From the IMG/VR virus record IMGVR_UViG_3300028654_000001, positions 448,572 to 512,571 of that record: 64,000 nucleotides of DNA, one strand, 5' to 3'. Position 1 is the first letter of the stretch. The number at the start of each line of letters is the position of its first letter. Shown one piece after another: positions 2,279 through 53,932 of this stretch. The position numbers and the translations under genes are program-made. The notes beneath the pieces were generated by a model, which ran no database searches, was not told the DNA's origin, and saw only the letters and a program-made list of their open reading frames with translations.

Positions 2279-2665
2279 CTAGTATGATGTTGGAAACTCT
2301 ACAGTGAAGATCCCATTCAATGTATCCAAGATACGCTTATAGAGGGGATCCGTGATGTCAACGATTGATGCATCAAACACCTGATTAGAGGGGGTGAAGC
2401 ACCAACTTGACTCAGGAACAATAGTGGTATCAAAACTACCATCACTCAAGTAAGGAATGATCTTTACCCAATCATCCCACCTGACTATTACACTGAACAG
2501 ACCAGGGTTGAATACCCGGACATAGGGAACATCATTGAGTACACCTTTGGTAACCGAAGCCTGACGGCGGAAGTATGCCGTCATGGCTTTTGCTAACTCA
2601 GGAGTCTCTCGACGAGTCAGCCTCTCTGGGCGTTGTCCTGCAATGTAGAACAGCCTTTGATCCAC
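2279..2665 (-). CDS. hypothetical protein
   Basis: 128-aa ORF in a tightly packed minus-strand run. Confidence 0.6.
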   Translation of the reverse strand: MDQRLFYIAGQRPERLTRRETPELAKAMTAYFRRQASVTKGVLNDVPYVRVFNPGLFSVIVRWDDWVKIIPYLSDGSFDTTIVPESSWCFTPSNQVFDASIVDITDPLYKRILDTLNGIFTVEFPTSY

Positions 2666-2695
2666 ATCGTGGTGGATAGATAACTAATTTCGTAC

Positions 2696-4342
<1,647 letters not shown>

Positions 4343-9318: not shown

Positions 9319-9363
9319 TACACCAAGGTGGAGACGATGGGACTTGCTAATTGTGGAGGTGGT

Positions 9364-9710
9364 TGGAAGTGCGGGGAATCGAACCCCGGTCCTTCAGTCG
9401 TCTGAGATCTCTTTCATTCACGTGCGTAGTTGCCACATCCCTGGCAACTGAGTTCGTGGATTCGGCCTACGACCTATTCTCCTGTTGATTTCATCAGAGG
9501 CTCCGGTGACCCGAGCCCCAAACTATCCCTAGTGGTTGGCAATCTTACCCGCTACCAAGACTATCTCGCGGAAGATCGGCCACAGTTACTCACGCAACCG
9601 CAGCATATGCGTTATCGTTCGCAATCACGTTTGCTTGATTGATCAAAGCGGGTCAAGCACCGCTTACACGCAAAAGATCCTTCCTTCCAAAGTCGAAACC
9701 TATCACTCCC
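9364..9710 (-). ncRNA. ssrA: tmRNA, tag (A)ANDNAYAAVA*
   Basis: 5' GGGAGTG-ATAGGTTTCGAC; 3' GACCGGGGTTCGATTCCCCG-CACTTCC-A with G3.U70; tag ORF 9622..9590. Confidence 0.95.
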
Positions 9711-11977: not shown

Positions 11978-12166
11978 TTACGCCAAACCTCTACTCTTTA
12001 GCTTGAATATCACCTGCATGACAGCAGGGTCATCCTTGCTTGGTAACTTGATCTTGTGCAGGATCTTGTACTTACCACTAGAATCAGTGGTATCTTGACG
12101 TTCGTCACTAGGACTCGACTGGCCTCGCAGCCAAGAGTCATTCTTTGGGTCAAACTTAATGTTCAT
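11978..12166 (-). CDS. hypothetical protein
   Basis: ATGA-coupled to upstream ART gene. Confidence 0.5.
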   Translation of the reverse strand: MNIKFDPKNDSWLRGQSSPSDERQDTTDSSGKYKILHKIKLPSKDDPAVMQVIFKLKSRGLA

Positions 12167-13353
12167 ATAACCCGCCCCTCATGAGCCCCACCCACAACCA
12201 ATATTTCAGCCTCAGTCTCGAGCTCTGGGTGTGTGATATTTGACATCAAGACTTTTTCTACTGGGATCTTAAATTCAAGTGCGGTGCCAAAGGCGGATGC
12301 ACGAGAAGAATCGTAACTGAAAGACGAGATGGACCTTGTGTCCAAACTGGCTTCCTGCCCTTTTTTAGACTTCTCGAGCCCTTGACCTTGAACCCCTCTG
12401 AACAGAGTTAGCTCTTTGATCCCCAAGTGCTTGTAGTAGGCCTGAGAGAAGTCATAGGCATCTTGTAGGTACTTCTTGAGTTCTTTGCTTTTAGCCCCAT
12501 CCTCACGGAATCCCTTAGCTTCATCCTCATCCTCTTTTGGAGTACGAGATCCACTAACCCCCCAGGATTCAACCGCTCCAACCATATTCTGAACAGACTC
12601 TGAATCAGCAAAGTCTCCCGCGATCCTCCACCCAGCAACAGCACCCCTACCGACTTTTTGAGCCTCAGCATCCTTTTTCGACAGGTATTGCTGGAAGTAC
12701 TCGCCGAGTTTATCGCCACCAGCCCATAGAGCTTGTTCCTGAGGGCTGAGACGATCAAAGGCCTTCTTAAACTTGTTAGGATACTGATCCCCAGGAGATC
12801 TCTTCTTCATATGGGCACTCTTGAAGGACTTGACTGCCTTAGTCATCTCAGCAGTGATCCTATCAAAGTGCTCCTTGTTTTCTGCTATGATCGCATCAAG
12901 TTTTTTGGCATCAGGCTTAAATGGATTGGTTGATACCTCTTCGTCGGAGTCACCCTTTGGTTTTGCCTCTGAAACTGGTTCCTTAGTTTCAGGCTTTTTA
13001 TCATCCTGATCTTCAGGATCCTTTGACCTGCCACCAGAGGTGTCCTCTTCCTTCTGCTTGCCAAGCCACTCATAGTACTCTTTTATGGCCTTAGAGTAGA
13101 AGCTAGGGTTCTTCAAAGCAGTACTAAAGGAGACTTCCTTGTTCTTCTTACGAGAATCAGAATCGGAGCTCGGGTTGGGTACTCTTCGCTTACCACCCTC
13201 TTGAGTGGAATCTAACCACTCTTTCCACCTAGGAGGGATCTTACCCTTCTTTGAAGACTCTTCACCTTCCTCCTCACCAGTGCTAAACGCAAGCTTGGTT
13301 TGGGCTCGAGCGTATCGAGCGGCAACACGAAGGATCAGGGCAGCTTCTGACAC
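12163..13353 (-). CDS. putative ADP-ribosyltransferase (R-S-ExE type) with N-terminal RVAARY motif
   Basis: C-terminal LTLFRGV...SISSFS...ASAFG...ETEAEILV; acidic/basic linker. Confidence 0.7.
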   Translation of the reverse strand: MSEAALILRVAARYARAQTKLAFSTGEEEGEESSKKGKIPPRWKEWLDSTQEGGKRRVPNPSSDSDSRKKNKEVSFSTALKNPSFYSKAIKEYYEWLGKQKEEDTSGGRSKDPEDQDDKKPETKEPVSEAKPKGDSDEEVSTNPFKPDAKKLDAIIAENKEHFDRITAEMTKAVKSFKSAHMKKRSPGDQYPNKFKKAFDRLSPQEQALWAGGDKLGEYFQQYLSKKDAEAQKVGRGAVAGWRIAGDFADSESVQNMVGAVESWGVSGSRTPKEDEDEAKGFREDGAKSKELKKYLQDAYDFSQAYYKHLGIKELTLFRGVQGQGLEKSKKGQEASLDTRSISSFSYDSSRASAFGTALEFKIPVEKVLMSNITHPELETEAEILVVGGAHEGRVI

Positions 13354-15210: not shown

Positions 15211-15312
15211 AGGAGAGACAAGAAGAGCGAAAAGAGTGCTCACCTAATGAGCTACCCACCCGAAGGCGGCTACGGAGTTGAACCATTGTACTTCTCGCGG
15301 GCATTCTCCCCT
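15211..15312 (-). ncRNA. Y RNA (YrlA-like) copy A
   Basis: GAATGC..GAAGTACAAT..CTTGTC stem enclosing T-loop GGTTCAACTCC, closed acceptor hairpin, D arm TAGCTCATTAGGTGAGC. Confidence 0.85.
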
Positions 15313-20446: not shown

Positions 20447-20577
20447 GCGGAGACAAGAAGTGCAGGGACTGTTTTGGGACCATTGCTCTGCCAGTTGAGC
20501 TACGCCTGCCAAAGCTGACGACGGGAATCGAACCCGCAACCCACGGTTTAGATTGTAGTCTCTACGATATTCTCCGC
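20447..20577 (-). ncRNA. Y RNA (YrlA-like) copy B
   Basis: GAATAT..GACTACAAT..CTTGTC stem; T-arm GCGGGTTCGATTCCCGT, closed acceptor, D arm TAGCTCAACTGGCAGAGC. Confidence 0.9.
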
Positions 20578-24799: not shown

Positions 24800-24883
24800 T
24801 GCATCAGAGAGGACTTGAACCTCCACGGGTATTACCCCACTTGCACCTCAAGCAAGCGTGTTTGCCAGTTACACCACTGATGC
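24800..24883 (-). tRNA. tRNA-Leu(GAG)
   Basis: Type II, loop TT-GAG-GT. Confidence 0.93.
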
Positions 24884-24940
24884 ATATGTTAGTAAGATAT
24901 GTCTAGGAAACCAAAGGTTTAACCCAAACAAAAAAAATTC

Positions 24941-25049
24941 AAGGAAAAAGCCGCTAAGTCACCCCTGACAAGGGGTGCATAAGACTCGTTTTCAACCATA
25001 GAATGTAGTCCCACACAGTATTCAGGGGCTACTTAGCGGCTATTTCCTT
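24941..25049 (-). ncRNA. Y RNA-like copy C (minimal core on extended ~19-bp stem)
   Basis: CCCCT-GAATAC..GACTACATT..CTTGTC-AGGGG; outer stem AAGGAAATAGCCGCTAAGT/ACTTAGCGGCTTTTTCCTT. Confidence 0.75.
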
Positions 25050-25057
25050 AAAAGTTT

Positions 25058-25285
25058 GACCTCGACAAGTGGTGACAGAGAGGGTTTTTGTGGCCTACAC
25101 ATTGATGGCCCATCTTTCGATGGGTGACATCCGTTCGTCCCGAGCCTTCGGCTCCCGACTAGTCTAAGTAGACGAGAGTCTCTGAGCCCTTGTTAAAGGG
25201 GCTACTGGCTCCATCGCTAGTCCCTCACGGGGCATCGCTACCTTAGGACCGTTATCGATTGTACTCCTTGTCGGTATTCGAGGTC
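25058..25285 (-). ncRNA. Y RNA-like copy D with large non-tRNA multi-hairpin domain
   Basis: GACCTC-GAATAC..GAGTACAAT..CTTGTC-GAGGTC; own promoter. Confidence 0.8.
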
Positions 25286-25291
25286 GAACGA

Positions 25292-25321
25292 GATATACAC
25301 CGATCTGATACCCAAGTGCAA
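25292..25321 (-). promoter_or_regulatory. promoter for Y RNA D/C
   Basis: TTGCAC-18 nt ending GGTG-TATATC, RNA starts ~7 nt later. Confidence 0.65.
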
Positions 25322-25369
25322 TAGGGAAAGTTGTCGGGGTGAAAGGATCTTCAACCTAGGTCAGCTAAT

Positions 25370-25446
25370 TGGTCAGGGCAGCCAGAGTTGAACTGGCGAT
25401 CTTGTGTTCCCGAAACACACGCTTTACCAGGCTAAGCTATACCCTG
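25370..25446 (-). tRNA. tRNA-Pro(CGG)
   Basis: Loop TT-CGG-GA, CCA. Confidence 0.93.
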
Positions 25447-25956
25447 AAGAGATAATTTCCCCTCGTGCACCCCAGCGTGACAGTTTCTACATAAGAGCAC
25501 ACAATTTTGAAGTTCTTGCTCTATCCGTTGCCAAGACCAACCCCTCCAACCTGAAAAGTTTGGGTCTTTCTTGCTAGGATCAAGGTGGTGCATATCTAGA
25601 GCTGACTTAAAAACATCAAACCCACAAATACGACAGTTACCACCGAGGTAAGCTATAACCTTACCCTTCTTTTCTTGACCCTTAGTTATGCAGTAATTAT
25701 TGTGACACCTACCGCACACTTTTAGCTTATGCCCATAAAACTTGGTGAGGTCGTCTTCACCACAGTATATACACTTGCGGGGTTTCCCATTAGGGTTTGG
25801 ATCATTCGGAAGTTTTCCATATGGGCCTCGTTTGGTATGAAGCTCATACTTATTAAGCCAATATCTAACATTTGTGAAAGAGGTGTTTAGATCTATGGCA
25901 ATCTGCCTTACACTCTTCCATTGCTGAAGATGTAGGATAAGAACTTCTTTTTCCAT
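25432..25956 (-). CDS. HTH + HNH homing endonuclease
   Basis: SVRQIAIDL HTH; LGGNCRICG..ALDMHHLDP..CVLLCRNCHAGVH; stop inside tRNA-Pro. Confidence 0.88.
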   Translation of the reverse strand: MEKEVLILHLQQWKSVRQIAIDLNTSFTNVRYWLNKYELHTKRGPYGKLPNDPNPNGKPRKCIYCGEDDLTKFYGHKLKVCGRCHNNYCITKGQEKKGKVIAYLGGNCRICGFDVFKSALDMHHLDPSKKDPNFSGWRGWSWQRIEQELQNCVLLCRNCHAGVHEGKLSLQGIA

Positions 25957-26014
25957 TATTCAGAGTGTAGCTCAGATTAGTAAAGGTACCAGATTGAGCT
26001 ATACCCTGATGAAA

Positions 26015-26178
26015 GTTGGCCGCTACTGGCGGGTTTCCCCGGCCAGTTACCAGAGCTTGCCTCTATCCGCTGCTTGCAACGGGGTCTACGGCAAGATGCC
26101 CAAGCCCGCGGTCTTTGCCAGGCTTGGAGATTCAGCTAGCCCGGTCCTTGTAGAGGCCCGGATGATCATTGCTAGCCT
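26015..26178 (-). ncRNA. candidate GC-rich multi-hairpin RNA
   Basis: GGCTAGC/GCTAGCT, CCAAGCCTG/CGGGCTTGG, CTTGCC/GGCAAG, ACTGGC/GCCAGT. Confidence 0.5.
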
Positions 26179-26540
26179 TATGAAAGTTCTTTGGAATCGT
26201 GTAGTCGACGCATCTGAATCTCGGCAGTATTCAGGGCGGCTTGGTAAACTGTGGATTCCCAGGGACTCAAGGACGCTTTATTTGGCTTGAACAAAGCCTT
26301 CTTCAAGAAGATCCCATCCATGCGGCCACATCTCTTGAGCTCGATTGGATTATCGATGATGAGGCCCAGAATGCCCATCGAGGCGTCCGAGGCCCCGCAC
26401 CAAGAGTCATCCCCACTGTTATTGAAGATGGCCCCAGAGAGGGCTATCTTACCGCACTGGAGGATGGTCAGGTGCCTCACCACAGGGGCGGGCATCCTAG
26501 CCAGGGTATCACCGATGAGGGTTCCTCGTTTGAGTGACAT
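26178..26540 (-). CDS. hypothetical protein
   Basis: ATG 11 nt after GGTG-TATTAT promoter. Confidence 0.55.
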   Translation of the reverse strand: MSLKRGTLIGDTLARMPAPVVRHLTILQCGKIALSGAIFNNSGDDSWCGASDASMGILGLIIDNPIELKRCGRMDGIFLKKALFKPNKASLSPWESTVYQAALNTAEIQMRRLHDSKELS

Positions 26541-26557
26541 GCTGAATAATACACCAG

Positions 26558-26631
26558 TCAGGGTAAATGGACTCGAACCATCGACCTCTTGCTCCCCGAG
26601 CAAGCGCTCTACCAAACTGAGCTACACCCTG
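26558..26631 (-). tRNA. tRNA-Pro(GGG)
   Basis: Loop TC-GGG-GA (C33). Confidence 0.9.
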
Positions 26632-26636
26632 ATAGT

Positions 26637-26776
26637 CACGAAGACAAGAATTCGAAAGAGAAACGTACGGCGTCTTGACCGCTAGACGACCCCCGCATAG
26701 GCTTGAGCGGAGGGAGGGATTCGAACCCCCGATATCCGGCTTGGATGGCAATGTACTCCTTCAGGCATTCTTCGTG
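26637..26776 (-). ncRNA. Y RNA (YrlA-like) copy E
   Basis: GAATGC..GAGTACATT..CTTGTC stem; T-arm GGGGGTTCGAATCCCTC, closed acceptor, Glu-type D arm TCGTCTAGCGGTCAAGAC. Confidence 0.88.
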
Positions 26777-27366
26777 GTGGTTGGAGGCGGAGTTGAACCG
26801 CCGACACCTTGATTTTCAGTCAAGTGCTCTACCGACTGAGCTATCCAACCGTTAGGCAAATCAAAGTCAAGAAGATCTCCTTCATACCTCTCTGCCTCAG
26901 CAATAAGCAATGAGTCCTCTCTGGTTGAATGCTCTATTCTGTGGCAACAAGAGCAGAGCAACTCACACTTCTCAAGTTCTTTCTTCAGTACACTCCAACT
27001 CTTGTTAGCTAAACCACCAAAGTTGAAGTCCTTATCACGTAGGTGGTGGAACTCAAAGGCTGACTGATGCCCAGACCACCCACACCTAATACATTTCCCA
27101 CCCAGCATCTTGATCCCAGTAGCTTTAGCTCGATATCTACGGATCTTGGTGTTGCAAGAGTTGCATCTACGTCTACGACTACTCCCATTAAGTCTACCGC
27201 AAATCACACATGAGTCATACGTTGGTGATTGAATCAACTCGACCCTAAGACCTGACTTGAATGGGACACAAGTAAGGCAAGCTCTTCTCCTGTTGAGAAC
27301 CCTAATGGTACCATCAACAATGACCCGATTAGGGAAGTTTACCTTGCATACTCGACAGGTAGGCAT
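26761..27366 (-). CDS. HNH homing endonuclease (reads through tRNA-Phe)
   Basis: LGGKCIRCG..AFEFHH..ELEKCELLCSCCHRIEH. Confidence 0.88.
   Translation of the reverse strand: MPTCRVCKVNFPNRVIVDGTIRVLNRRRACLTCVPFKSGLRVELIQSPTYDSCVICGRLNGSSRRRRCNSCNTKIRRYRAKATGIKMLGGKCIRCGWSGHQSAFEFHHLRDKDFNFGGLANKSWSVLKKELEKCELLCSCCHRIEHSTREDSLLIAEAERYEGDLLDFDLPNGWIAQSVEHLTENQGVGGSTPPPTTTKNA
26775..26850 (-). tRNA. tRNA-Phe(GAA)
   Basis: Loop CT-GAA-AA, CCA. Confidence 0.96.
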
Positions 27367-27385
27367 ACCAAAAATATAGCACAAT

Positions 27386-27471
27386 TGGTATCGGAGGAGG
27401 GACTCGAACCCTCAAGGGATTTCTCCCAGCAGTATTTGAAGCTGCCGCGTTTGCCTTTTCGCCACTCCGGC
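27386..27471 (-). tRNA. tRNA-Leu(CAA)
   Basis: Type II, loop TT-CAA-AT, CCA; C2.A71 mismatch. Confidence 0.88.
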
Positions 27472-27477
27472 ATGTAG

Positions 27478-27559
27478 TACCCAAGGAGAGACTTGAACTC
27501 TCACGTCACAAGGACCACCGGTTCTGAGCCGGCGCTGTACGCCATTCCAGCACTTGGGC
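27478..27559 (-). tRNA. tRNA-Leu(CAG)
   Basis: Type II, loop CT-CAG-AA. Confidence 0.92.
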
Positions 27560-27563
27560 ATGG

Positions 27564-27633
27564 ACCAGAGACAAGAAGTGCAGAGAGGGTGTTTTCTCCA
27601 ATTGAATTGTACTCCCCACGAGCATTCTCTGGT
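27564..27633 (-). ncRNA. Y RNA-like copy F (minimal)
   Basis: ACCAGA-GAATGC..GAGTACAAT..CTTGTC-TCTGGT. Confidence 0.75.
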
Positions 27634-27634
27634 T

Positions 27635-27709
27635 TGGTCGGCCGAGGTGGACTTGAACCACCGTTACACGCGTATCAGGCGTAGATCCTAACCATTAGAA
27701 GACCGGCCG
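27635..27709 (-). tRNA. tRNA-Ile(GAT), atypical body
   Basis: Loop CT-GAT-AC, acceptor CGGCCGG/TCGGCCG, CCA. Confidence 0.85.
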
Positions 27710-28093
27710 TCGTCGCATCCCATTGGTTCGATACCTGTGACAGAGAGCGCAAACAAGCTCACACTTGGCGATCTCCTCAAGTAATCTTTCAACGGAGGTG
27801 CATTTTGAATTTGCACGAGCTATCTCAAAAGACTTTGTTGTTGGGTCAAGATGATCAAAGTCCATAGCCCAGTAAGGGTGTGGCTCTCCACAATCTGTAC
27901 AAGGCTTGCCACTCTTGGCCTCCTGGATGACCCTCTTGATTTCAGCTCTGATCTTTACCTTATCCTTTCTAACTCTGGCACATTGACACAACTTGCAGTA
28001 CCCCATGAGGTACTTACCCCTCCCGTGAAACTCACGTTCGGACTTAGTTTGAGTGCAAGCCGGGCAATACTTGGTGCGCTTAGCTTTCGGTAT
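27695..28093 (-). CDS. zinc-finger + HNH endonuclease (non-ATG start or decaying)
   Basis: KYCPACTQTK..EF upstream of first ATG; PCTDCG..MDFDHLDP..EIAKCELVCALCHRYRT. Confidence 0.75.
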   Translation of the reverse strand: MPKAKRTKYCPACTQTKSEREFHGRGKYLMGYCKLCQCARVRKDKVKIRAEIKRVIQEAKSGKPCTDCGEPHPYWAMDFDHLDPTTKSFEIARANSKCTSVERLLEEIAKCELVCALCHRYRTNGMRRRPVF

Positions 28094-28132
28094 ACTGGTG
28101 ATAACTACACCAATGAGTTATCACCGAAAGTG

Positions 28133-28271
28133 AGCGAAGACAAGAGAGTGAAAGACAAGGGAACCCTTCTAAATACCACTCGTGAAGCTTTCACTTCACG
28201 GCAGGATCTGCCCCTGCAAAGCTCCCGGGCGTAAGCCCCCGGATAATGAAGTCCTTCTTGCATTCTTCGCT
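28133..28271 (-). ncRNA. Y RNA-like copy G (three-hairpin domain)
   Basis: AGCGAA-GAATGC..GACTTCATT..CTTGTC-TTCGCT; inner CCGGG, GCAGG/CCTGC, CGTGAAG/CTTCACG hairpins. Confidence 0.75.
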
Positions 28272-28358
28272 TGGTAGCCCCTCCCGGACTCGAACCGGGA
28301 CGTCACGAAGGACAGGAGGGTTTAAGCCTCCCCCGTCTGCCAGTTCCAGCAAGGAGCC
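28272..28358 (-). tRNA. tRNA-Leu(TAA)
   Basis: Type II, loop CT-TAA-AC, CCA. Confidence 0.92.
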
Positions 28359-28361
28359 ATG

Positions 28362-28550
28362 TTAGTCTTTGGTCTTCCAGATCTCGTCTGTAATTGGAGG
28401 GAGCAGCTCGCCAGCCTCAAGGGCTCTTCGACGGTCTTCCTCCATACGAATCTTCATCTCTTCATAACGGAGGCGATCCTCCTCCGTCTCCTCGGGCTCT
28501 GGGATGATCCCACCCTCTTCAGCTATCACCCTAGTCTGAACTATAACCAT
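28362..28550 (-). CDS. small acidic protein
   Basis: 62-aa ORF between FmdB-like gene and tRNA. Confidence 0.5.
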   Translation of the reverse strand: MVIVQTRVIAEEGGIIPEPEETEEDRLRYEEMKIRMEEDRRRALEAGELLPPITDEIWKTKD

Positions 28551-28719
28551 CGGAGGCCCAACCCTTCCCTTGAAGTTGAAAACCTGTGCCGCCGCTTATG
28601 AGCCTCTTGGCTTCTGGCTTGTCGCACTTGGGGCAATCCGTCAACGGAGGCTCCGTAATCTTCTGGTCAGCCTCCCAGGTGTGTTGGCAGGCCTTGCATT
28701 GGTACTCGTAAGTCGGCAC
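28531..28719 (-). CDS. FmdB-family zinc-ribbon protein
   Basis: (M)PTYEYQCKACQH..QKITEPPLTDCPKC..KRLIS..FQLQGKGW; GTG start. Confidence 0.85.
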   Translation of the reverse strand: MPTYEYQCKACQHTWEADQKITEPPLTDCPKCDKPEAKRLISGGTGFQLQGKGWASDGYSSD

Positions 28720-29927: not shown

Positions 29928-29994
29928 GGTGAGACAAGGGACAAACTAGAGAGGTTCAATTATCGAGATTGTACTCCAGTTCAGCATTCTCACC
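29928..29994 (-). ncRNA. Y RNA-like copy H (minimal)
   Basis: GGTGA-GAATGC..GAGTACAAT..CTTGTC-TCACC. Confidence 0.75.
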
Positions 29995-47261: not shown

Positions 47262-48911
47262 TTAGAGTTGAACTTGATTGATAGTCTCGATCCAGTGCCC
47301 ATTGCCTGTACCAGTGATGAACGCGTTCATCACTTTGAACACCTCATCGCTAAAACCCCCGATGTTGAGAACATCAACATTATCCTTCACTTGGGTGGTC
47401 GTGTGCGGGGTGATGTCAATGCAAACGAGCTTTGCATTCGGGTTACGGGTCTTGAGCTTCTCCCATTCGTCAGCCATTGAAGTCGGCTTCGGGCCTCGAC
47501 TCCCCCAGTAGGATTCATAGACCCTACCCATCCCGCCACCATGACTCCATGACTCATAATCGGAAACGAAGATCACAACATCTACCTTCCTATTATCTTT
47601 GTTCATCACCTGTAGAGGAGAGGCACAGTTCGTGGACCCACCGCCGACTGCCGCAAGAATCCCGGCGTTCTTCATGATGGTGTTGTTTGAGTTCAACTTC
47701 ACATCAGTCCGAACATCACCTTCGAACGGGTACACTTGAGCACGAGGATTCTTCCTCAGCAAGCAGGAAGAGATCAAAGCTGCCACATCGACACACATTA
47801 CGGTGGTTGTTGAGCCCTTTCGCTCACCCGTAACCGGGCTCCGCATTGACCCAGAGACGTCCGTGCAGATAGCTACCTCGAGACCCTCGAAGGCAGGAAC
47901 GTTAACCGTTGCCACCTCCATAGCTACCTCGAGAGCATGCTCAATCTCCTTGGGCATGTTGACCGGCTTCTCATCCTTGTGCCAGGTGCTACCCTCATTG
48001 ATGGCTTTGTAAGCCGTCATGATCTGGTATGGAAAGACATTCGCCTTCCTGATGAGATCCGTATGGTTTAGCTTCTCTACCACTAGCTTCACCATCTTGG
48101 GATCAGTGAAGACACCGTGACGAGCAAAGGTGTTGAGACTCCTGAAAGTCTGGAACCAAGAAGCCTTAGTAGCCACAGCTTTCCAGTCCTCCGGGCTTAA
48201 CTGGAGACCGAGCAGCATCTCGAAAGGTGCGTTCGGTATCTCACCTACCGGGGAAGCCTTGAAGGCCTCATACGAGGCAATCAGAGCTGGCACGGCCTCA
48301 CTCACAGTGAAGGGCAGACCTTCGAACTTACCCTCCTTCTTACCGATCAGGTAAGCATAGAGGGCAGACCTCTGAGCGGACGTCGGGGCTACCCGAGCCA
48401 TCTTTACGATATCACCCAGGGTCGGTTTATCACCAACTGACTGGAAGAAGATCTGCTCATCAGTCCTGGAATTAAACCAGGCCGTGACCATTCTCTTGAG
48501 CCGCTGAGCTGACAGATTATGCCGCCCAAAAGACCCAGACCGGATCATCTGCGCGAAGTTACGCAGCATCTTGCCATTATTGATGACCCTCGGGAACACC
48601 TGAGCACAGAGGTCAGGATCCCTAGCTGCTAGGTAGGAGACCAGGGCTGCCGGCATGTCCTTCATGAACCCACTCTCGCGGGCATAGACTGCCACCTTGG
48701 CCAGGAACAATGGATGTGCCTGACGTGCAAGGGTCAGAACCTGAGCCAACTGATCTTCGGCCTTCGTGTAATAAGTGTTGTTAAAACAACCAGTTACACT
48801 TAACTGTGCAAGAGCCGCTTCAGCTTCCATGCTGTAGGCCGCCGCCCCAGCATAGTTCACTACCGTCGCATCTTGGACAGACTTACGCCCTGCTTTCTTC
48901 GACGACTTCAT
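47262..48911 (-). CDS. Ro60/Rsr TROVE-domain RNA-binding protein
   Basis: LAQLSVTGCFNNTYY, AVYARESGFMKDMPA, GKMLRNF, VFPYQ, VWA DVSGSM, GGGSTNC, SDYESW, IGGFSD. Confidence 0.95.
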   Translation of the reverse strand: MKSSKKAGRKSVQDATVVNYAGAAAYSMEAEAALAQLSVTGCFNNTYYTKAEDQLAQVLTLARQAHPLFLAKVAVYARESGFMKDMPAALVSYLAARDPDLCAQVFPRVINNGKMLRNFAQMIRSGSFGRHNLSAQRLKRMVTAWFNSRTDEQIFFQSVGDKPTLGDIVKMARVAPTSAQRSALYAYLIGKKEGKFEGLPFTVSEAVPALIASYEAFKASPVGEIPNAPFEMLLGLQLSPEDWKAVATKASWFQTFRSLNTFARHGVFTDPKMVKLVVEKLNHTDLIRKANVFPYQIMTAYKAINEGSTWHKDEKPVNMPKEIEHALEVAMEVATVNVPAFEGLEVAICTDVSGSMRSPVTGERKGSTTTVMCVDVAALISSCLLRKNPRAQVYPFEGDVRTDVKLNSNNTIMKNAGILAAVGGGSTNCASPLQVMNKDNRKVDVVIFVSDYESWSHGGGMGRVYESYWGSRGPKPTSMADEWEKLKTRNPNAKLVCIDITPHTTTQVKDNVDVLNIGGFSDEVFKVMNAFITGTGNGHWIETINQVQL

Positions 48912-49093
48912 GATTATCTCTCCATTTCCACCGAAGTGGAACAAGTTGCCCCAATAATTGAGGACCGTCACTTATACACTACCTTTTGAGACGTGCAAGG
49001 TAAAATCGACAGGAACCTCAAAAAGGGTTATCCCACAATGTGGCCAAGTTATGAAAATTACTTGACTTTTTGAGACGCCCTTCGGTGTAGAGA

Positions 49094-50026: not shown

Positions 50027-50031
50027 GTTAG

Positions 50032-50103
50032 AGACCCCAGGGGGGTTCGAACCCCCGCATATGGAGTTAGAGTCCGGTGTTCTGCCAATTGAACTATGGG
50101 GTC
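50032..50103 (-). tRNA. amber suppressor-type tRNA(CTA)
   Basis: Acceptor GACCCCA/TGGGGTC, D and T arms canonical, loop CT-CTA-AC, only 3-bp anticodon stem. Confidence 0.75.
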
Positions 50104-52522: not shown

Positions 52523-53932
52523 TCATGGGATTCCTTCGGAATTTGAAGCTATGCCAAGTTTCCTATTTGGAGATACCTTGGTAGTAAGCTTCCGGCTCGG
52601 AGCTACGAGCTCGTCTGACAGCCTTCCAGAGGAACTGTCCCGGCGAAGCCGGTATCGCTCTCTCAAGAGGGCCTTCACTTCGGAGGGGTAATCATCGAGA
52701 CCAATCTGTTTGTCCTCGGAACGTCCGAGCAAATTGATCCCTCCAACCACATCCGCGTGTGAAATCCTGCCGCATCCACGGCATCGAAACCTTGTCCCAG
52801 ATCGGTTTGACCTGGAGATGTACCCACATGAGGGGCACATCTGTGATGAATAAGCTGGGTTTACTACAATTGTAGGAGCCTTCGTGCTTAATGAGTGATG
52901 CAAGGCCCGATAAGCAAATCTCTTTTGACCACTACAACCAGAAAGATTCAGATCCTCAATGACGAAAGCATGACCTGGATACTTAGTAACTAGTTTGTTA
53001 GCAACAGTACCCGTTGCTGTCTTGATCAAACCCGATAGTTGATCTTCGAGACGGTTCAACCTAGGAGAGTTCTCTTTGAAACCTTGTCGTTGTCGATTGG
53101 CTCGAAGAGCTCTTACTCTCGTATAGAGTTCATTAAACCTAGGCTTAATGGAAGCCCCATAAAGATCCCCTTTAGATGTAGCCGCTATTACATTGAGACC
53201 AATATCAACCCCAATCCTTGGCATCCCAGGATAAAATTTAGGCTCTTCGATGATCTTCTTCTCTAGGACCTCAACTCGCCAACGACCCCTTTTGTCCTTA
53301 CGGATGAGGCACCCGTTGACGATCTCTTCTGGGGACTTGATGTGAGGGTTAGCTACAATTGGAACCCAAACCCGATGATTTTTCTTGAGGTTTGAGAATC
53401 CAAGCCACCAGGGAGAGAGCCTTGTTTCATTGACCTTGATGTCGCTCGTATGGATCGACATCCGTATCCCGATTCGGTTCGAAGACGTAGGACTCTTCCC
53501 ACTTACCTTTGGATCAAGTAAAAGAGACCAATAGAGGTCAATGGCTTCTTGAGTGATTATATCTGTTGGCCGGTCTACGTTGTACTTCCCGATAGTGAAG
53601 AGTTGAAAGCGGATGGCCTCAATGATCTGATCTTCTTTGAAGAATTTCTTTATGTGCTTCTTGATTCTTCTGGTATACAGAGAAGTCGTCCAAGTTAGAA
53701 CTATTTCTACGGCGTGCTGTTGACAGGCCATCACGAGATTGGTTGAAAGAACCTTCTCGACTGGGAAGAAACGAAGGATCTCTCCGCGAGGGACACGCAT
53801 CCTCCTGGATTGAATCATCAAGTCAATACAGGATTGAAGATACCGACGATATTCGATATGAAGGGCTTCGAGAGCCTGGATTTTTTCTGAGTTGGTCTCA
53901 GGGTGAAAGTAGAGGACGCGGGAGCGCTTCAC
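52523..53932 (-). mobile_element. tnpB: TnpB (IS200/IS605-family RNA-guided nuclease), no TnpA
   Basis: RuvC-I IGVDIGLN, RuvC-II VIEDLN, AYSSQMCPSCG..FRCRGCG, RuvC-III HADVVGGINL. Confidence 0.9.

What the first reader, a model, noticed from the sequence alone, without database searches (positions are those of the whole stretch)
25058..25321. 228-nt Y RNA with its own promoter and a non-tRNA multi-hairpin effector domain
Seen: the conserved Ro-type stem encloses about 170 nt of small hairpins (CCC-GTGA-GGG, GCCCCTTTAACAAGGGCT, GAGC-CGAA-GGCTC, CCCATC-GAAA-GATGGG) with no T or D arm. It has a dedicated TTGCAC-18-TATATC promoter and is followed by minimal copy C on a long stem and a U-rich end. 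Inference: a separately regulated Y RNA that recruits an unknown partner.
Basis: partly seen in the sequence, partly recalled or inferred. Interest (0 to 1): 0.62.

Follow-up and report, generated by a model that had tools for sequence, protein, structure and literature searches.

The report
Y RNA carrying a 23S rRNA mimic
This 228-nt phage RNA is a genuine Y RNA (a partner of the Ro60 protein) whose middle part, instead of imitating a tRNA as known bacterial Y RNAs do, carries an exact copy of a universally conserved piece of 23S ribosomal RNA, and it belongs to a widespread family that appears to be undescribed.

Summary
Window 25058-25285 (minus strand) is a 228-nt RNA closed by an 8-bp stem, with no T or D arm. 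It is followed by a minimal Y copy inside a long hairpin that ends in U8.

The stem is one of six paralogous YrlA-type stems in this 512-kb phage's tRNA array. The phage encodes Ro60 at 47262-48971.

The insert holds a 21-nt sense copy of 23S rRNA (about nt 1916-1936, helix 69 3' half and the strand after it), then a GNRA hairpin where helix 71 sits, then UAGCGA.

Pattern scans found at least 88 distinct relatives in phage and metagenome contigs and in bacterial genomes. Most carry the whole helix 69 hairpin. The helix-71-position hairpin covaries. In 22 of 46 bacterial loci an Ro60 gene lies on the same strand within 3 kb. A model built without this RNA finds it at E 2.5e-14.

Rfam 15 and the searchable literature hold no such family.

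The "dedicated promoter" is a chance-level match, and relatives start directly after a tRNA. No RNA reads exist for this phage.

Verdict: a real Y RNA and a new variant, with an rRNA-mimic module. The module's partner is unknown.

The parts
25058..25285 (-). YD: the 228-nt Y RNA with the 23S rRNA-mimic module (whole RNA, from P1 5' strand to P1 3' strand)
   Evidence: Model R2, built from 17 homologs without this RNA, hits 25195-25285 at 68.9 bits, E 2.5e-14, starting exactly at 25285. It is the only such RNA in the 512-kb genome.
25278..25285 (-). P1 5' strand GACCUCGA. It contains the CGAA core of the Ro60-recognition motif and runs into the GAAUAC loop (25274-25279).
   Evidence: The motif GNCGAAN0-1G / CGAA is described in PMC4201824 and PMC12135203.
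25264..25272 (-). P2 5' strand GACAAGGAG, followed by the conserved UACAAU (25258-25263)
25249..25258 (-). Miniature helix-69 hairpin UCG-AUAA-CGG (3 bp). Most relatives have the full CCGU-AACUAUA-ACGG hairpin here.
25235..25255 (-). 21-nt exact sense copy of 23S rRNA (E. coli numbering about 1916-1936): helix 69 3' half plus the conserved strand that follows
   Evidence: It matched 100% in all 5426 E. coli genomes, always under '23S ribosomal RNA'.
25222..25231 (-). P3: the hairpin CCC-GUGA-GGG in the position of helix 71, flanked by GCGA and UAGCGA (25214-25219), which can form two G-C pairs around it
   Evidence: covariation in 43 sequences; GNRA loop in 75 of 88
25142..25211 (-). P4 sub-domain. 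The closing helix GAGCC (25207-25211) with GGCUC (25142-25146) encloses hairpin 25185-25203 and the extended hairpin 25157-25180.
   Evidence: Compensatory: GAGCC/GGCUC here against GCACC/GGUGC in L036 and L013.
25092..25141 (-). Conserved GGGACGAACGG (25131-25141), the P5 hairpin with a GAAA loop (25104-25131) and the conserved AAUGUGUAGGCC (25092-25103)
25058..25082 (-). P2 3' strand CUCUCUGUC (25074-25082), internal loop ACCACUUG (25066-25073) and P1 3' strand UCGAGGUC (25058-25065)
24930..25053 (-). YC: a minimal Y stem (about 24955-25035) inside a long hairpin (24938-25053), directly followed by U8 (24930-24937). It looks like an intrinsic terminator.
   Evidence: (z -9.1)
25292..25321 (-). 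The match is chance-level and it is not accepted as a promoter.
47262..48971 (-). Ro60 (Rsr) homolog of the phage, the presumed protein partner
   Evidence: vWA_Ro60 59.5 bits, TROVE 27.5 bits; 42.5% identity to the Myxococcus phage Mx1 TROVE protein; 46% identity to an Ro60 next to a mimic Y RNA in a Myxococcota MAG
20447..20577 (-). YA: a paralogous YrlA-like Y RNA with a permuted tRNA-like domain (T arm, then D arm)
   Evidence: (Rfam YrlA 41 bits, E 4e-8, full length)
15212..15311 (-). YE: a second Y RNA with a reduced tRNA-like domain
   Evidence: (35 bits, E 5e-6)
27565..27632 (-). YB: a minimal Y RNA between tRNA-Ile and tRNA-Leu
29928..29994 (-). YF: a minimal Y RNA (weaker match)
   Evidence: (25 bits, E 0.002)

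Best explanation
YD (25058-25285, minus strand) is a Y RNA, a noncoding partner of the phage's Ro60 protein, and belongs to a subclass that appears to be undescribed.

Its basal stem (P1, the GAAUAC / ACCACUUG internal loop, P2) is the YrlA-type Ro60-binding module. In place of the tRNA-like module of YrlA it carries a module copied from the centre of 23S rRNA domain IV:
- helix 69, here shrunk to a 3-bp mini-hairpin;
- the invariant strand ACGGUCCUAAGGUAGCGA;
- a GNRA-capped hairpin where helix 71 sits;
- UAGCGA and two further sub-domains.

Shown: the sequence identity to 23S rRNA, the family, the covariation, the linkage to Ro60 genes, and the location in tRNA arrays.

Inferred: the RNA is cut out of the polycistronic tRNA-array transcript, as its relatives that abut tRNAs must be. 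Transcription mostly ends at the YC hairpin with U8. The stem binds Ro60. The rRNA-like module gives that RNP its specificity.

My preferred mechanism is as follows. The module presents to Ro60, or to a host factor that reads this 23S segment, a look-alike of an exposed or damaged helix 69-71 region. It then acts as a pseudo-substrate or gate, or as a tether linking Ro60 (and the exonuclease it works with) to ribosomal particles. In this phage's version the helix 69 loop is dispensable and the strand GGUCCUAAGGUAGCGA is kept. I therefore weight recognition of that strand above docking through the helix 69 loop. The strand contains GGUCCUA, one base from the GGUCCGA that vertebrate Ro60 contacts.
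For: Y stem:
- Four (later six) paralogs share invariant motifs. P1 is 100% paired, with double changes at 5 of 8 pairs, and the covariation score is 0.635 against 0.259 in shuffles.
- One paralog matches Rfam YrlA full-length.

Ro60:
- It is encoded in the window.

23S copy:
- 21 of 21 nt are identical to 23S rRNA in the sense orientation. Chance expectation for the 246-nt stretch compared (25050-25295) is about 3e-7 (my arithmetic).

Family:
- Homologs lie in 7 viral contigs, more than 60 metagenome contigs and 46 loci of species genomes.
- In 88 distinct members the 18 nt upstream of the search pattern, which the pattern did not enforce, are 11.4/18 identical to 23S 1906-1923. The hairpin loop is GNRA in 75 of 88.
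- The helix-71-position hairpin covaries: 66 double-change cells against 26 +/- 4 in shuffles, 0 of 500 shuffles as high, and slid controls far lower.
- P1, P3 and P4 show compensatory changes across 9 full-length homologs. Full-length homology to L036 and L013 is seen.
- The independent model R2 gives 68.9 bits, E 2.5e-14.

Ro60 linkage:
- 22 of 46 genomic loci have an Ro60 homolog on the same strand within 160 nt to 3 kb.
- Pfam confirms the neighbour as Ro60 in L099, L142 and L185, and a TROVE match lies next to L012's RNA.

Context:
- The same tRNA-array and HNH context occurs in L142.

Not already catalogued:
- No Rfam family covers these RNAs.
Against: - There are no expression data. No RNA run holds this phage, so the ends and even transcription are inferred.
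- Binding to Ro60 is inferred from homology and gene linkage only.
- In this phage Ro60 lies 22 kb away, not adjacent.
- Rfam YrlA does not hit YD. The exact GNCGAAN0-1G motif is only partly present (CUCGAAUA).
- Folding energy is not exceptional: z -1.77 for the whole RNA and -0.69 for the insert. The homology-guided structure (-60 to -65 kcal/mol) is above the MFE (-74.5).
- YD lacks the 5' half and the loop of helix 69 that most relatives keep, so it may be a degenerate member.
- A closely related phage (L004/L005) lacks the whole cassette, so it is dispensable.
- The function of the module is not shown by anything here.
Confidence: 0.8

Rival explanations
1. It is a separately transcribed Y RNA, with its own sigma-70 promoter at 25292-25321 and a start at about 25285. 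A generic set of small hairpins recruits an unknown partner.
For: The hexamers are in the sequence, and a start 7 nt after the -10 element would coincide with the first base of P1. An 83-nt spacer separates YD from the upstream tRNA-Pro, unlike in relatives. A terminator-like hairpin with U8 follows.
Against: The hexamers match 3/6 and 4/6, the scan does not call them, and such matches occur once per 49 nt. Homologs start 0-3 nt after a tRNA. The other five Y RNAs here also abut tRNAs. The domain is not generic: it is a conserved copy of a 23S rRNA segment. The host and its promoter type are unknown.
Confidence: 0.12
2. The 23S-identical stretch matters as DNA, not RNA. It would be a copy of the rDNA site that many homing endonucleases recognise, kept as a landing pad, decoy or scar of mobile-element traffic. 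An HNH endonuclease gene lies just upstream.
For: From memory, the conserved span coincides with a stretch of rDNA known as a homing-endonuclease and intron hot spot; PMC2602781, listed but not read, deals with a common rDNA target site of homing endonucleases. An HNH gene lies at 25432-25956. The whole cassette (HNH, tRNA-Pro, YD, YC, tRNA-Leu) is an indel relative to a 97%-identical phage. HNH genes also sit in the related arrays.
Against: The stretch is always embedded in the same strand and position of a Y-type stem. It is followed by a hairpin that keeps pairing through compensatory changes, which is selection on RNA. It is linked to Ro60 on the same strand in 22 of 22 cases. No member was seen interrupted by an intron. 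The HNH gene is not consistently adjacent.
Confidence: 0.04
3. It is a structured spacer or processing element of the tRNA array, or a decaying Y RNA pseudogene, with no Ro60-related role. The rRNA piece would be a captured fragment without function.
For: The folding energy is not exceptional. YD has a shrunken helix 69 and an extra duplicated GAGCC segment. The cassette is absent from a close relative. There are no expression data.
Against: Full-length conservation with L036 and L013 from unrelated samples, with compensatory changes in P1, P3, P4 and P5. The core strand is invariant across at least 88 members. Ro60 linkage is strong. The sequence is identical in four independent rhizosphere metagenomes.
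Confidence: 0.06

Closest known systems
YrlA (Rfam RF02553; bacterial and phage Y RNAs that mimic tRNA; Chen et al. 2014, PMC4201824)
   Same: A basal stem with an internal loop carrying the CGAA / GAAUGC and CUUGUC motifs. Encoded near, and on the same strand as, Ro60. Occurs in phages. A mimic module sits on top of the stem. A YrlA-like paralog lies in the same array.
   Different: The module imitates 23S rRNA (helix 69, nt 1925-1936, a helix-71-position hairpin) rather than tRNA T, D and acceptor arms. YD is about twice as long. Rfam's model does not hit it.
YrlB of Salmonella and M. smegmatis and Yrn2 of D. radiodurans (second, non-tRNA-like Y RNAs; PMC4201824)
   Same: They are additional Y RNAs beside the tRNA-like one in the same genome and lack a full tRNA-like domain.
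   Different: [quoted passage not shown] That description fits YB, YC and YF here, not YD, which has a 183-nt multi-helix module with rRNA identity.
23S rRNA domain IV, helix 69 to helix 71 (Rfam LSU_rRNA_bacteria RF02541)
   Same: 21 nt are identical in YD, and up to 29 nt plus the complete helix 69 hairpin in relatives. A hairpin follows at the helix 71 position, closed by a G-C pair as G1935-C1962 does in the rRNA.
   Different: The 8-9 nt between nt 1936 and helix 71 are missing. The loop is GNRA rather than the helix 71 loop in most members. Nothing else of the rRNA is present; other short matches are at background level. The Rfam LSU model does not hit YD.
Yrl1 and Yrl2 of Thermus phage phiLo (PMC12135203)
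   Same: Phage-encoded Y-like RNAs with a CGAA motif that bind a phage Ro60 and host PNPase in vitro.
   Different: They are encoded directly upstream of the phage Ro60 gene. No rRNA-like module is reported in the passages read.
GOLLD and ROOL: large ornate RNAs of phage tRNA arrays
   Same: Structured noncoding RNAs located among phage tRNA genes. One relative (L069) lies 400 nt from a GOLLD RNA.
   Different: No sequence or model match to YD. No Ro60-type stem is known for them (my knowledge).

Membership tests
Bacterial/phage Y RNA (criteria of Chen et al. 2014, PMC4201824) | A long stem formed by the 5' and 3' ends, with a conserved internal loop or bulge region | tested here: met
   P1 8 bp and P2 9 bp flank the loop GAAUAC / ACCACUUG. 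They covary among paralogs and homologs.
Bacterial/phage Y RNA (criteria of Chen et al. 2014, PMC4201824) | The motif GNCGAAN0-1G near the 5' end | tested here: inconclusive
   YD has CUCGAAUA: the CGAA core is present, but the first G and the last G are not. Many relatives have a perfect match, for example GGCCGAAAGG or UCGAAUGC.
Bacterial/phage Y RNA (criteria of Chen et al. 2014, PMC4201824) | Encoded within 4 kb of an Ro60 gene on the same strand | tested here: not met
   For YD itself, Ro60 is on the same strand but 22 kb away. For the family the criterion is met in 22 of 46 genomic loci, all on the same strand, and in L099 and L012.
Bacterial/phage Y RNA (criteria of Chen et al. 2014, PMC4201824) | Physical association with Ro60 | not testable with these tools
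   This needs immunoprecipitation or a gel shift.
YrlA (Rfam RF02553) | Score at or above the gathering threshold (69 bits) | tested here: not met
   There is no hit on YD even at E <= 10. The paralog YA reaches 41 bits.
YrlA (Rfam RF02553) | A tRNA-like module (T arm, D arm, acceptor-like stem) | tested here: not met
   No tRNA or T-loop match lies in 25085-25258. The module is rRNA-like instead.
New subclass: Y RNA with a 23S helix 69-71 mimic (defined here) | Y-type 5' strand, then (CCGUAACUAU)AACGGUCCUAAGGUAGCGA, then a hairpin, then UAGCGA, in that order | tested here: met
   The model built from 17 members without YD gives 68.9 bits, E 2.5e-14. See also the alignment.
New subclass: Y RNA with a 23S helix 69-71 mimic (defined here) | A complete helix 69 hairpin | tested here: not met
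   YD keeps only AUAACGG (a 3-bp mini-hairpin), as do L007, L013 and L036.
LSU rRNA gene or fragment (Rfam RF02541) | Match to the LSU covariance model beyond the short identical stretch | tested here: not met
   No LSU hit at E <= 10. Only the 1903-1936 region recurs across the family.

The most novel reading that the evidence does not exclude
Ro60 RNPs come in a second flavour aimed at the ribosome. A widespread class of Y RNAs, found in phages with tRNA arrays and in Myxococcota, Planctomycetota and Cyanobacteria, presents a faithful copy of 23S rRNA helix 69 and nt 1925-1936. This is the 50S face that forms the central intersubunit bridges. Either Ro60 itself recognises this strand in damaged or unassembled 50S particles and the Y RNA is its built-in pseudo-substrate or gate, or the module docks the Ro60-exonuclease complex onto 30S subunits or helix-69-reading factors. 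In a phage that would let it remodel or protect host ribosomes alongside its own tRNA set.
Probability: 0.3. Interest if true: 0.9.

Novelty: new variant of a known kind. Interest (0 to 1): 0.8.

Why it matters
Bacterial Y RNAs are known as tRNA mimics. What Ro60 does in bacteria and phages, and how Y RNA modules give it specificity, is still largely open.

An rRNA-mimicking module with up to 29 nt of identity to the most conserved stretch of 23S rRNA is a concrete, testable clue. It points to the ribosome, or to factors that read helix 69-71, as a target of Ro60 RNPs.

The family is large: at least 88 distinct members across several bacterial phyla and many large phages. It has clear covariation and is absent from Rfam 15, so it can be added as a new family and used to annotate tRNA arrays.

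It also bears on what giant phages carry in their tRNA arrays besides tRNAs. This one has six Y RNAs of three kinds.

Tried and rejected
- **Rfam.** At gathering and at E <= 10 there was no family for YD or for 20 relatives.
- **BLAST against cultured phages.** The locus gave no match. A relative's 5' half hit only real 23S rRNA genes carried in phage records, including Paenibacillus phage Pd_22F, which I read and found to be true rRNA.
- **Wider 23S homology.** A 12-mer (GGGAGCCGAAGG) and a 10-mer (CCGUGAGGGA) of YD also occur in E. coli 23S. They do not recur across the family and are at the level of the antisense control. I rejected them as chance; the 12-mer partly reflects an internal duplication of GAGCC.
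- **RNAalifold pairing.** It proposed pairing of AGGA.U with GGUCCU and of UGCC with GGUA. All these columns are invariant, so this is untestable, and it competes with P2, which covaries. I did not adopt it.
- **Population variation.** Four other rhizosphere runs hold the locus without a single difference, so they carry no covariation signal.
- **RNA evidence.** No RNA run holds the stretch.
- **Promoter.** The match is chance-level.
- **Phage-encoded partners.** No RtcB and no RluD-type pseudouridine synthase is in the 512-kb genome.
- **Myxococcus phage Mx1 (closest cultured Ro60).** It has no mimic-type Y RNA, only two weak Y-stem candidates.
- **The protein next to the cyanobacterial versions.** There was no Pfam or PDB match.
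- **Reviews.** Two Wolin-lab reviews could not be read because they are not held. The claim 'not described' therefore rests on four full-text searches and on Rfam only.

Full report
**Setting.** The window is the last 64 kb of a 512,571-bp phage record with direct terminal repeats. Matching DNA occurs in many rhizosphere metagenomes. All 42 tRNA genes and a tmRNA gene lie on the minus strand. An Ro60 (Rsr) homolog lies at 47262-48971, also on the minus strand. It scores 59.5 bits for Pfam vWA_Ro60 and 27.5 bits for TROVE. Its best cultured relative is the TROVE protein of Myxococcus phage Mx1, at 42.5% identity.

**The observation.** On the minus strand, 25285-25058 is closed by an 8-bp helix, GACCUCGA with UCGAGGUC. 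A second helix, GACAAGGAG with CUCUCUGUC, lies inside it. Between the two helices lies the asymmetric loop GAAUAC / ACCACUUG.

The same architecture and the same invariant letters recur elsewhere on the same strand. A first alignment of four copies shows them. P1 is paired in every copy, with double changes at 5 of 8 pairs. The covariation score is 0.635 against 0.259 +/- 0.076 in shuffles, and at most 0.24 when the partner columns are slid. A model of the stem then found six copies in the whole genome, all in this array:
- YE, 15212-15311
- YA, 20447-20577
- YC, about 24955-25035
- YD, 25058-25285
- YB, 27565-27632
- YF, 29928-29994

YA matches Rfam YrlA over its full length (41 bits, E 4e-8, below the gathering score of 69). 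It has the permuted T-arm and D-arm module typical of YrlA.

No tRNA-like element lies in the 183-nt insert of YD. YC sits inside a very stable long hairpin (-60 kcal/mol, z -9.1) that runs directly into U8. This looks like an intrinsic terminator.

The insert begins with AUAACGGUCCUAAGGUAGCGA (25255-25235). These 21 nt are identical, in the sense orientation, to 23S rRNA in all 5426 complete E. coli genomes. The position is about 1916-1936. In the Rfam LSU structure this is the 3' half of helix 69, followed by the conserved strand that leads to helix 71. For the 246-nt stretch compared (25050-25295) against a 2.9-kb rRNA, a 21-mer match is expected about 3e-7 times by chance (my arithmetic).

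**The family.** Patterns built from this stretch found one, then seven, phage contigs in IMG/VR. They also found more than 120 metagenome contigs and 54 loci in species-representative genomes. About half of the metagenome hits are true LSU rRNA genes whose helix 71 happens to read GUCGC-AUAAGUA-GCGAC. I set these aside.

The rest number at least 88 distinct sequences and share one design. A Y-type 5' strand comes first (UCGAAUGC..GGACUACA or GGGCCGAAAGGC). Then follow CCGUAACUAUAACGG(U)CCUAAGGUAGCGA, a short hairpin, UAGCGA, a variable sub-domain and conserved 3' elements. The Y-type 3' strand (CUUGUC or CUCGUC plus the P1 complement) closes the RNA.

The 18 nt upstream of my pattern were not enforced by it. 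They are nevertheless 11.4/18 identical on average to 23S 1906-1923, and 34 of 88 reach at least 14/18. Most members therefore carry the whole helix 69 hairpin with its exact loop. The longest exact matches to E. coli 23S are 29 nt. No other part of the rRNA recurs above the antisense background.

The hairpin that follows sits where helix 71 sits in the rRNA. It has a GNRA loop in 75 of 88 members. It covaries strongly: all five stem pairs show double changes, with 66 double-change cells against 26 +/- 4.3 in shuffles. None of 500 shuffles reached this, and slid controls gave 13-35. Two AT-rich phage versions keep a helix-71-like loop, GUAAUU.

**YD is a member.** A covariance model built from the 5' halves of 17 members, without YD, hits 25285-25195 at 68.9 bits, E 2.5e-14. 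The hit starts at the first base of P1. It is the only such site in the 512-kb genome.

Over its full length YD aligns with L036:5234-5445 and L013:431-651. Compensatory changes support the main helices:
- The closing helix of the next sub-domain reads GAGCC/GGCUC in YD and GCACC/GGUGC in the other two. Other members differ again.
- The hairpin after GGGACGA(A/G)CGG reads GAUG..CAUC in YD, GCGG..CCGC in L036 and GUGG..CCAC in L013.

The homology-guided structure of YD costs -60.4 kcal/mol, or -65.5 when completed, against an MFE of -74.5. Thermodynamics alone would not have flagged the insert (z -0.69).

YD, L007, L013 and L036 form a phage sub-lineage in which helix 69 is shrunk to a 2-3-bp mini-hairpin, while ACGG(U/C)CCUAAGGUAGCGA stays invariant. 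Synteny is also kept: a tRNA, then the mimic Y RNA, then tRNA-Leu(gag) and a minimal Y RNA.

**Link to Ro60.** In L099 an ORF with TROVE (127 bits) and vWA_Ro60 (196 bits) starts about 180 nt after the motif. In the contig of L012 a TROVE match (142 bits) follows the RNA and a YrlA-like element.

Among 46 mimic-type loci of species genomes, 22 have an Ro60 homolog inside the fetched 8 kb or less. All 22 are on the same strand, at 160 nt to 3 kb. Fourteen have the RNA 160-841 nt downstream of the gene, mostly about 200 nt. These are mainly Myxococcota and Planctomycetota.

Ro60 proteins of the window's own type (34-46% identity) accompany type-I RNAs like YD in Myxococcota MAGs, for example L134 and L185. 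In L142, rsr and the RNA sit inside a 28-tRNA array with an HNH gene, the same kind of island as in this phage.

The cyanobacterial versions have instead a conserved unannotated neighbour with no Pfam or PDB match. A protein-language-model search places it near TROVE/VWA clusters. This is a lead, not a result.

**Promoter and transcript.** TTGCAC-18-TATATC is present, and a start 7 nt downstream would be the first base of P1. However, it matches the consensus only 3/6 and 4/6, and the scan does not call it. Matches that good occur once per 49 nt per strand in this window.

Relatives start 0-3 nt after the preceding tRNA. The five other Y RNAs here abut tRNAs as well. I therefore take YD to be processed from the array transcript. 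The 83-nt spacer before YD is unexplained.

No RNA run holds the locus. Four further DNA runs hold it without any difference. A 97%-identical phage (L004/L005) has the YA and YB homologs but lacks the cassette of HNH, tRNA-Pro(cgg), YD, YC and tRNA-Leu(gag). The cassette is therefore mobile or dispensable.

**How it most likely works.**

Shown:
- a Y-type stem;
- an rRNA-identical module under purifying and compensatory selection;
- linkage to Ro60 genes and to tRNA arrays.

Inferred from the established behaviour of Y RNAs (PMC4201824, PMC12135203):
- the stem binds Ro60;
- the module sets what the RNP does.

Two readings of the module fit the data.

(a) It is a look-alike of the Ro60 substrate or a second Ro60 site. 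The invariant strand contains GGUCCUA, one base from the GGUCCGA that vertebrate Ro60 contacts according to PMC4201824. The module would then gate the protein or compete with exposed 23S rRNA.

(b) It is a tether. It would be recognised by whatever reads helix 69-71, such as the 30S subunit face of the central bridges or helix-69-specific enzymes or factors (my knowledge of ribosome structure, not tested).

YD has lost the helix 69 loop but kept the strand, so for this phage I weight (a) above loop-dependent versions of (b).

The phage encodes no RtcB and no RluD-type synthase. Any enzyme partner would be the host's.

**Comparison with what is known.** It works like a Y RNA and meets the structural definition. 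It does not meet the YrlA definition, because it has no tRNA-like module and no Rfam hit. It is not an rRNA fragment beyond the short copy.

Rfam 15 has no family for it. Four full-text searches found no description of an rRNA-mimicking Y RNA. Two relevant reviews were not available.

**Verdict.** The element is real and is a Y RNA. The promoter claim is unsupported. The effector domain is a conserved 23S rRNA mimic that defines a new, widespread variant of Y RNA. I leave nothing for another person to decide.

Noticed in passing
window 15212-15311 (-) and 29928-29994 (-): There are two further Y RNA genes beyond the four alignable by eye. YE has a reduced tRNA-like domain (35 bits). YF is minimal (25 bits, E 0.002). 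The phage thus has six Y RNAs of three kinds, all in the tRNA array.
   Followed up: partly
window 50031-50103 (-): ARAGORN labels this good tRNA (58.6 bits) as tRNA-Pyl. Its anticodon is CUA, so it would read the amber codon. It lies 1 kb from the Ro60 gene. I did not test whether the phage recodes TAG.
   Followed up: no
window 9361-9710 (-): A phage-encoded tmRNA (96 bits) with an unusual predicted tag peptide lies at the edge of the tRNA array.
   Followed up: no
window 24806-28556 compared with L005:6980-9830: A phage 97% identical in the flanks lacks the cassette of HNH gene, tRNA-Pro(cgg), YD, YC and tRNA-Leu(gag), but keeps homologs of YA and YB. The array is mosaic, with HNH genes at the joints.
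   Followed up: partly
window 52523-53932 (-), 2696-4342 (-), 12163-13353 (-): The window also holds a TnpB/Cas12f-like ORF (Cas12f1-like_TNB plus OrfB_IS605), a Cpn60 chaperonin, and a protein with a DRAT-like ADP-ribosyltransferase domain inside the tRNA array.
   Followed up: no
L123:918-2075 (+), with homologs in L140, L145, L151, L163, L172, L176, L177, L179, L181, L182: The cyanobacterial versions of the mimic RNA are not next to a recognisable Ro60. They lie next to a conserved unannotated protein with no Pfam or PDB match. A language-model search places it near TROVE/VWA clusters, so it may be a very divergent Ro60.
   Followed up: partly
L069:427-905 and L069:1300-1334: A GOLLD RNA (154.6 bits) lies 400 nt upstream of a 23S-mimic motif in the same contig. 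Two kinds of ornate RNA are neighbours there.
   Followed up: no
L008:2366-2665 (-), L011:2857-3140 (-): AT-rich phage contigs carry a version of about 290 nt with a longer 23S match (AACUAUAACGGUCCUAAGGUAGCGA) and a helix-71-like loop (GUAAUU). It has no obvious YrlA-type stem, so the mimic module may also exist outside Y RNAs.
   Followed up: no
L071 about 2634-2700 (+), L167:7843-7883 (+): Short tandem repeats contain CCUAAGGUAGCGA or UAGCGA units. They are probably unrelated pattern hits.
   Followed up: no
window 25286-25369 (-): An 83-nt spacer lies between tRNA-Pro(cgg) and YD. It has no counterpart in relatives, where the RNA abuts the tRNA. Its origin is unexplained.
   Followed up: no
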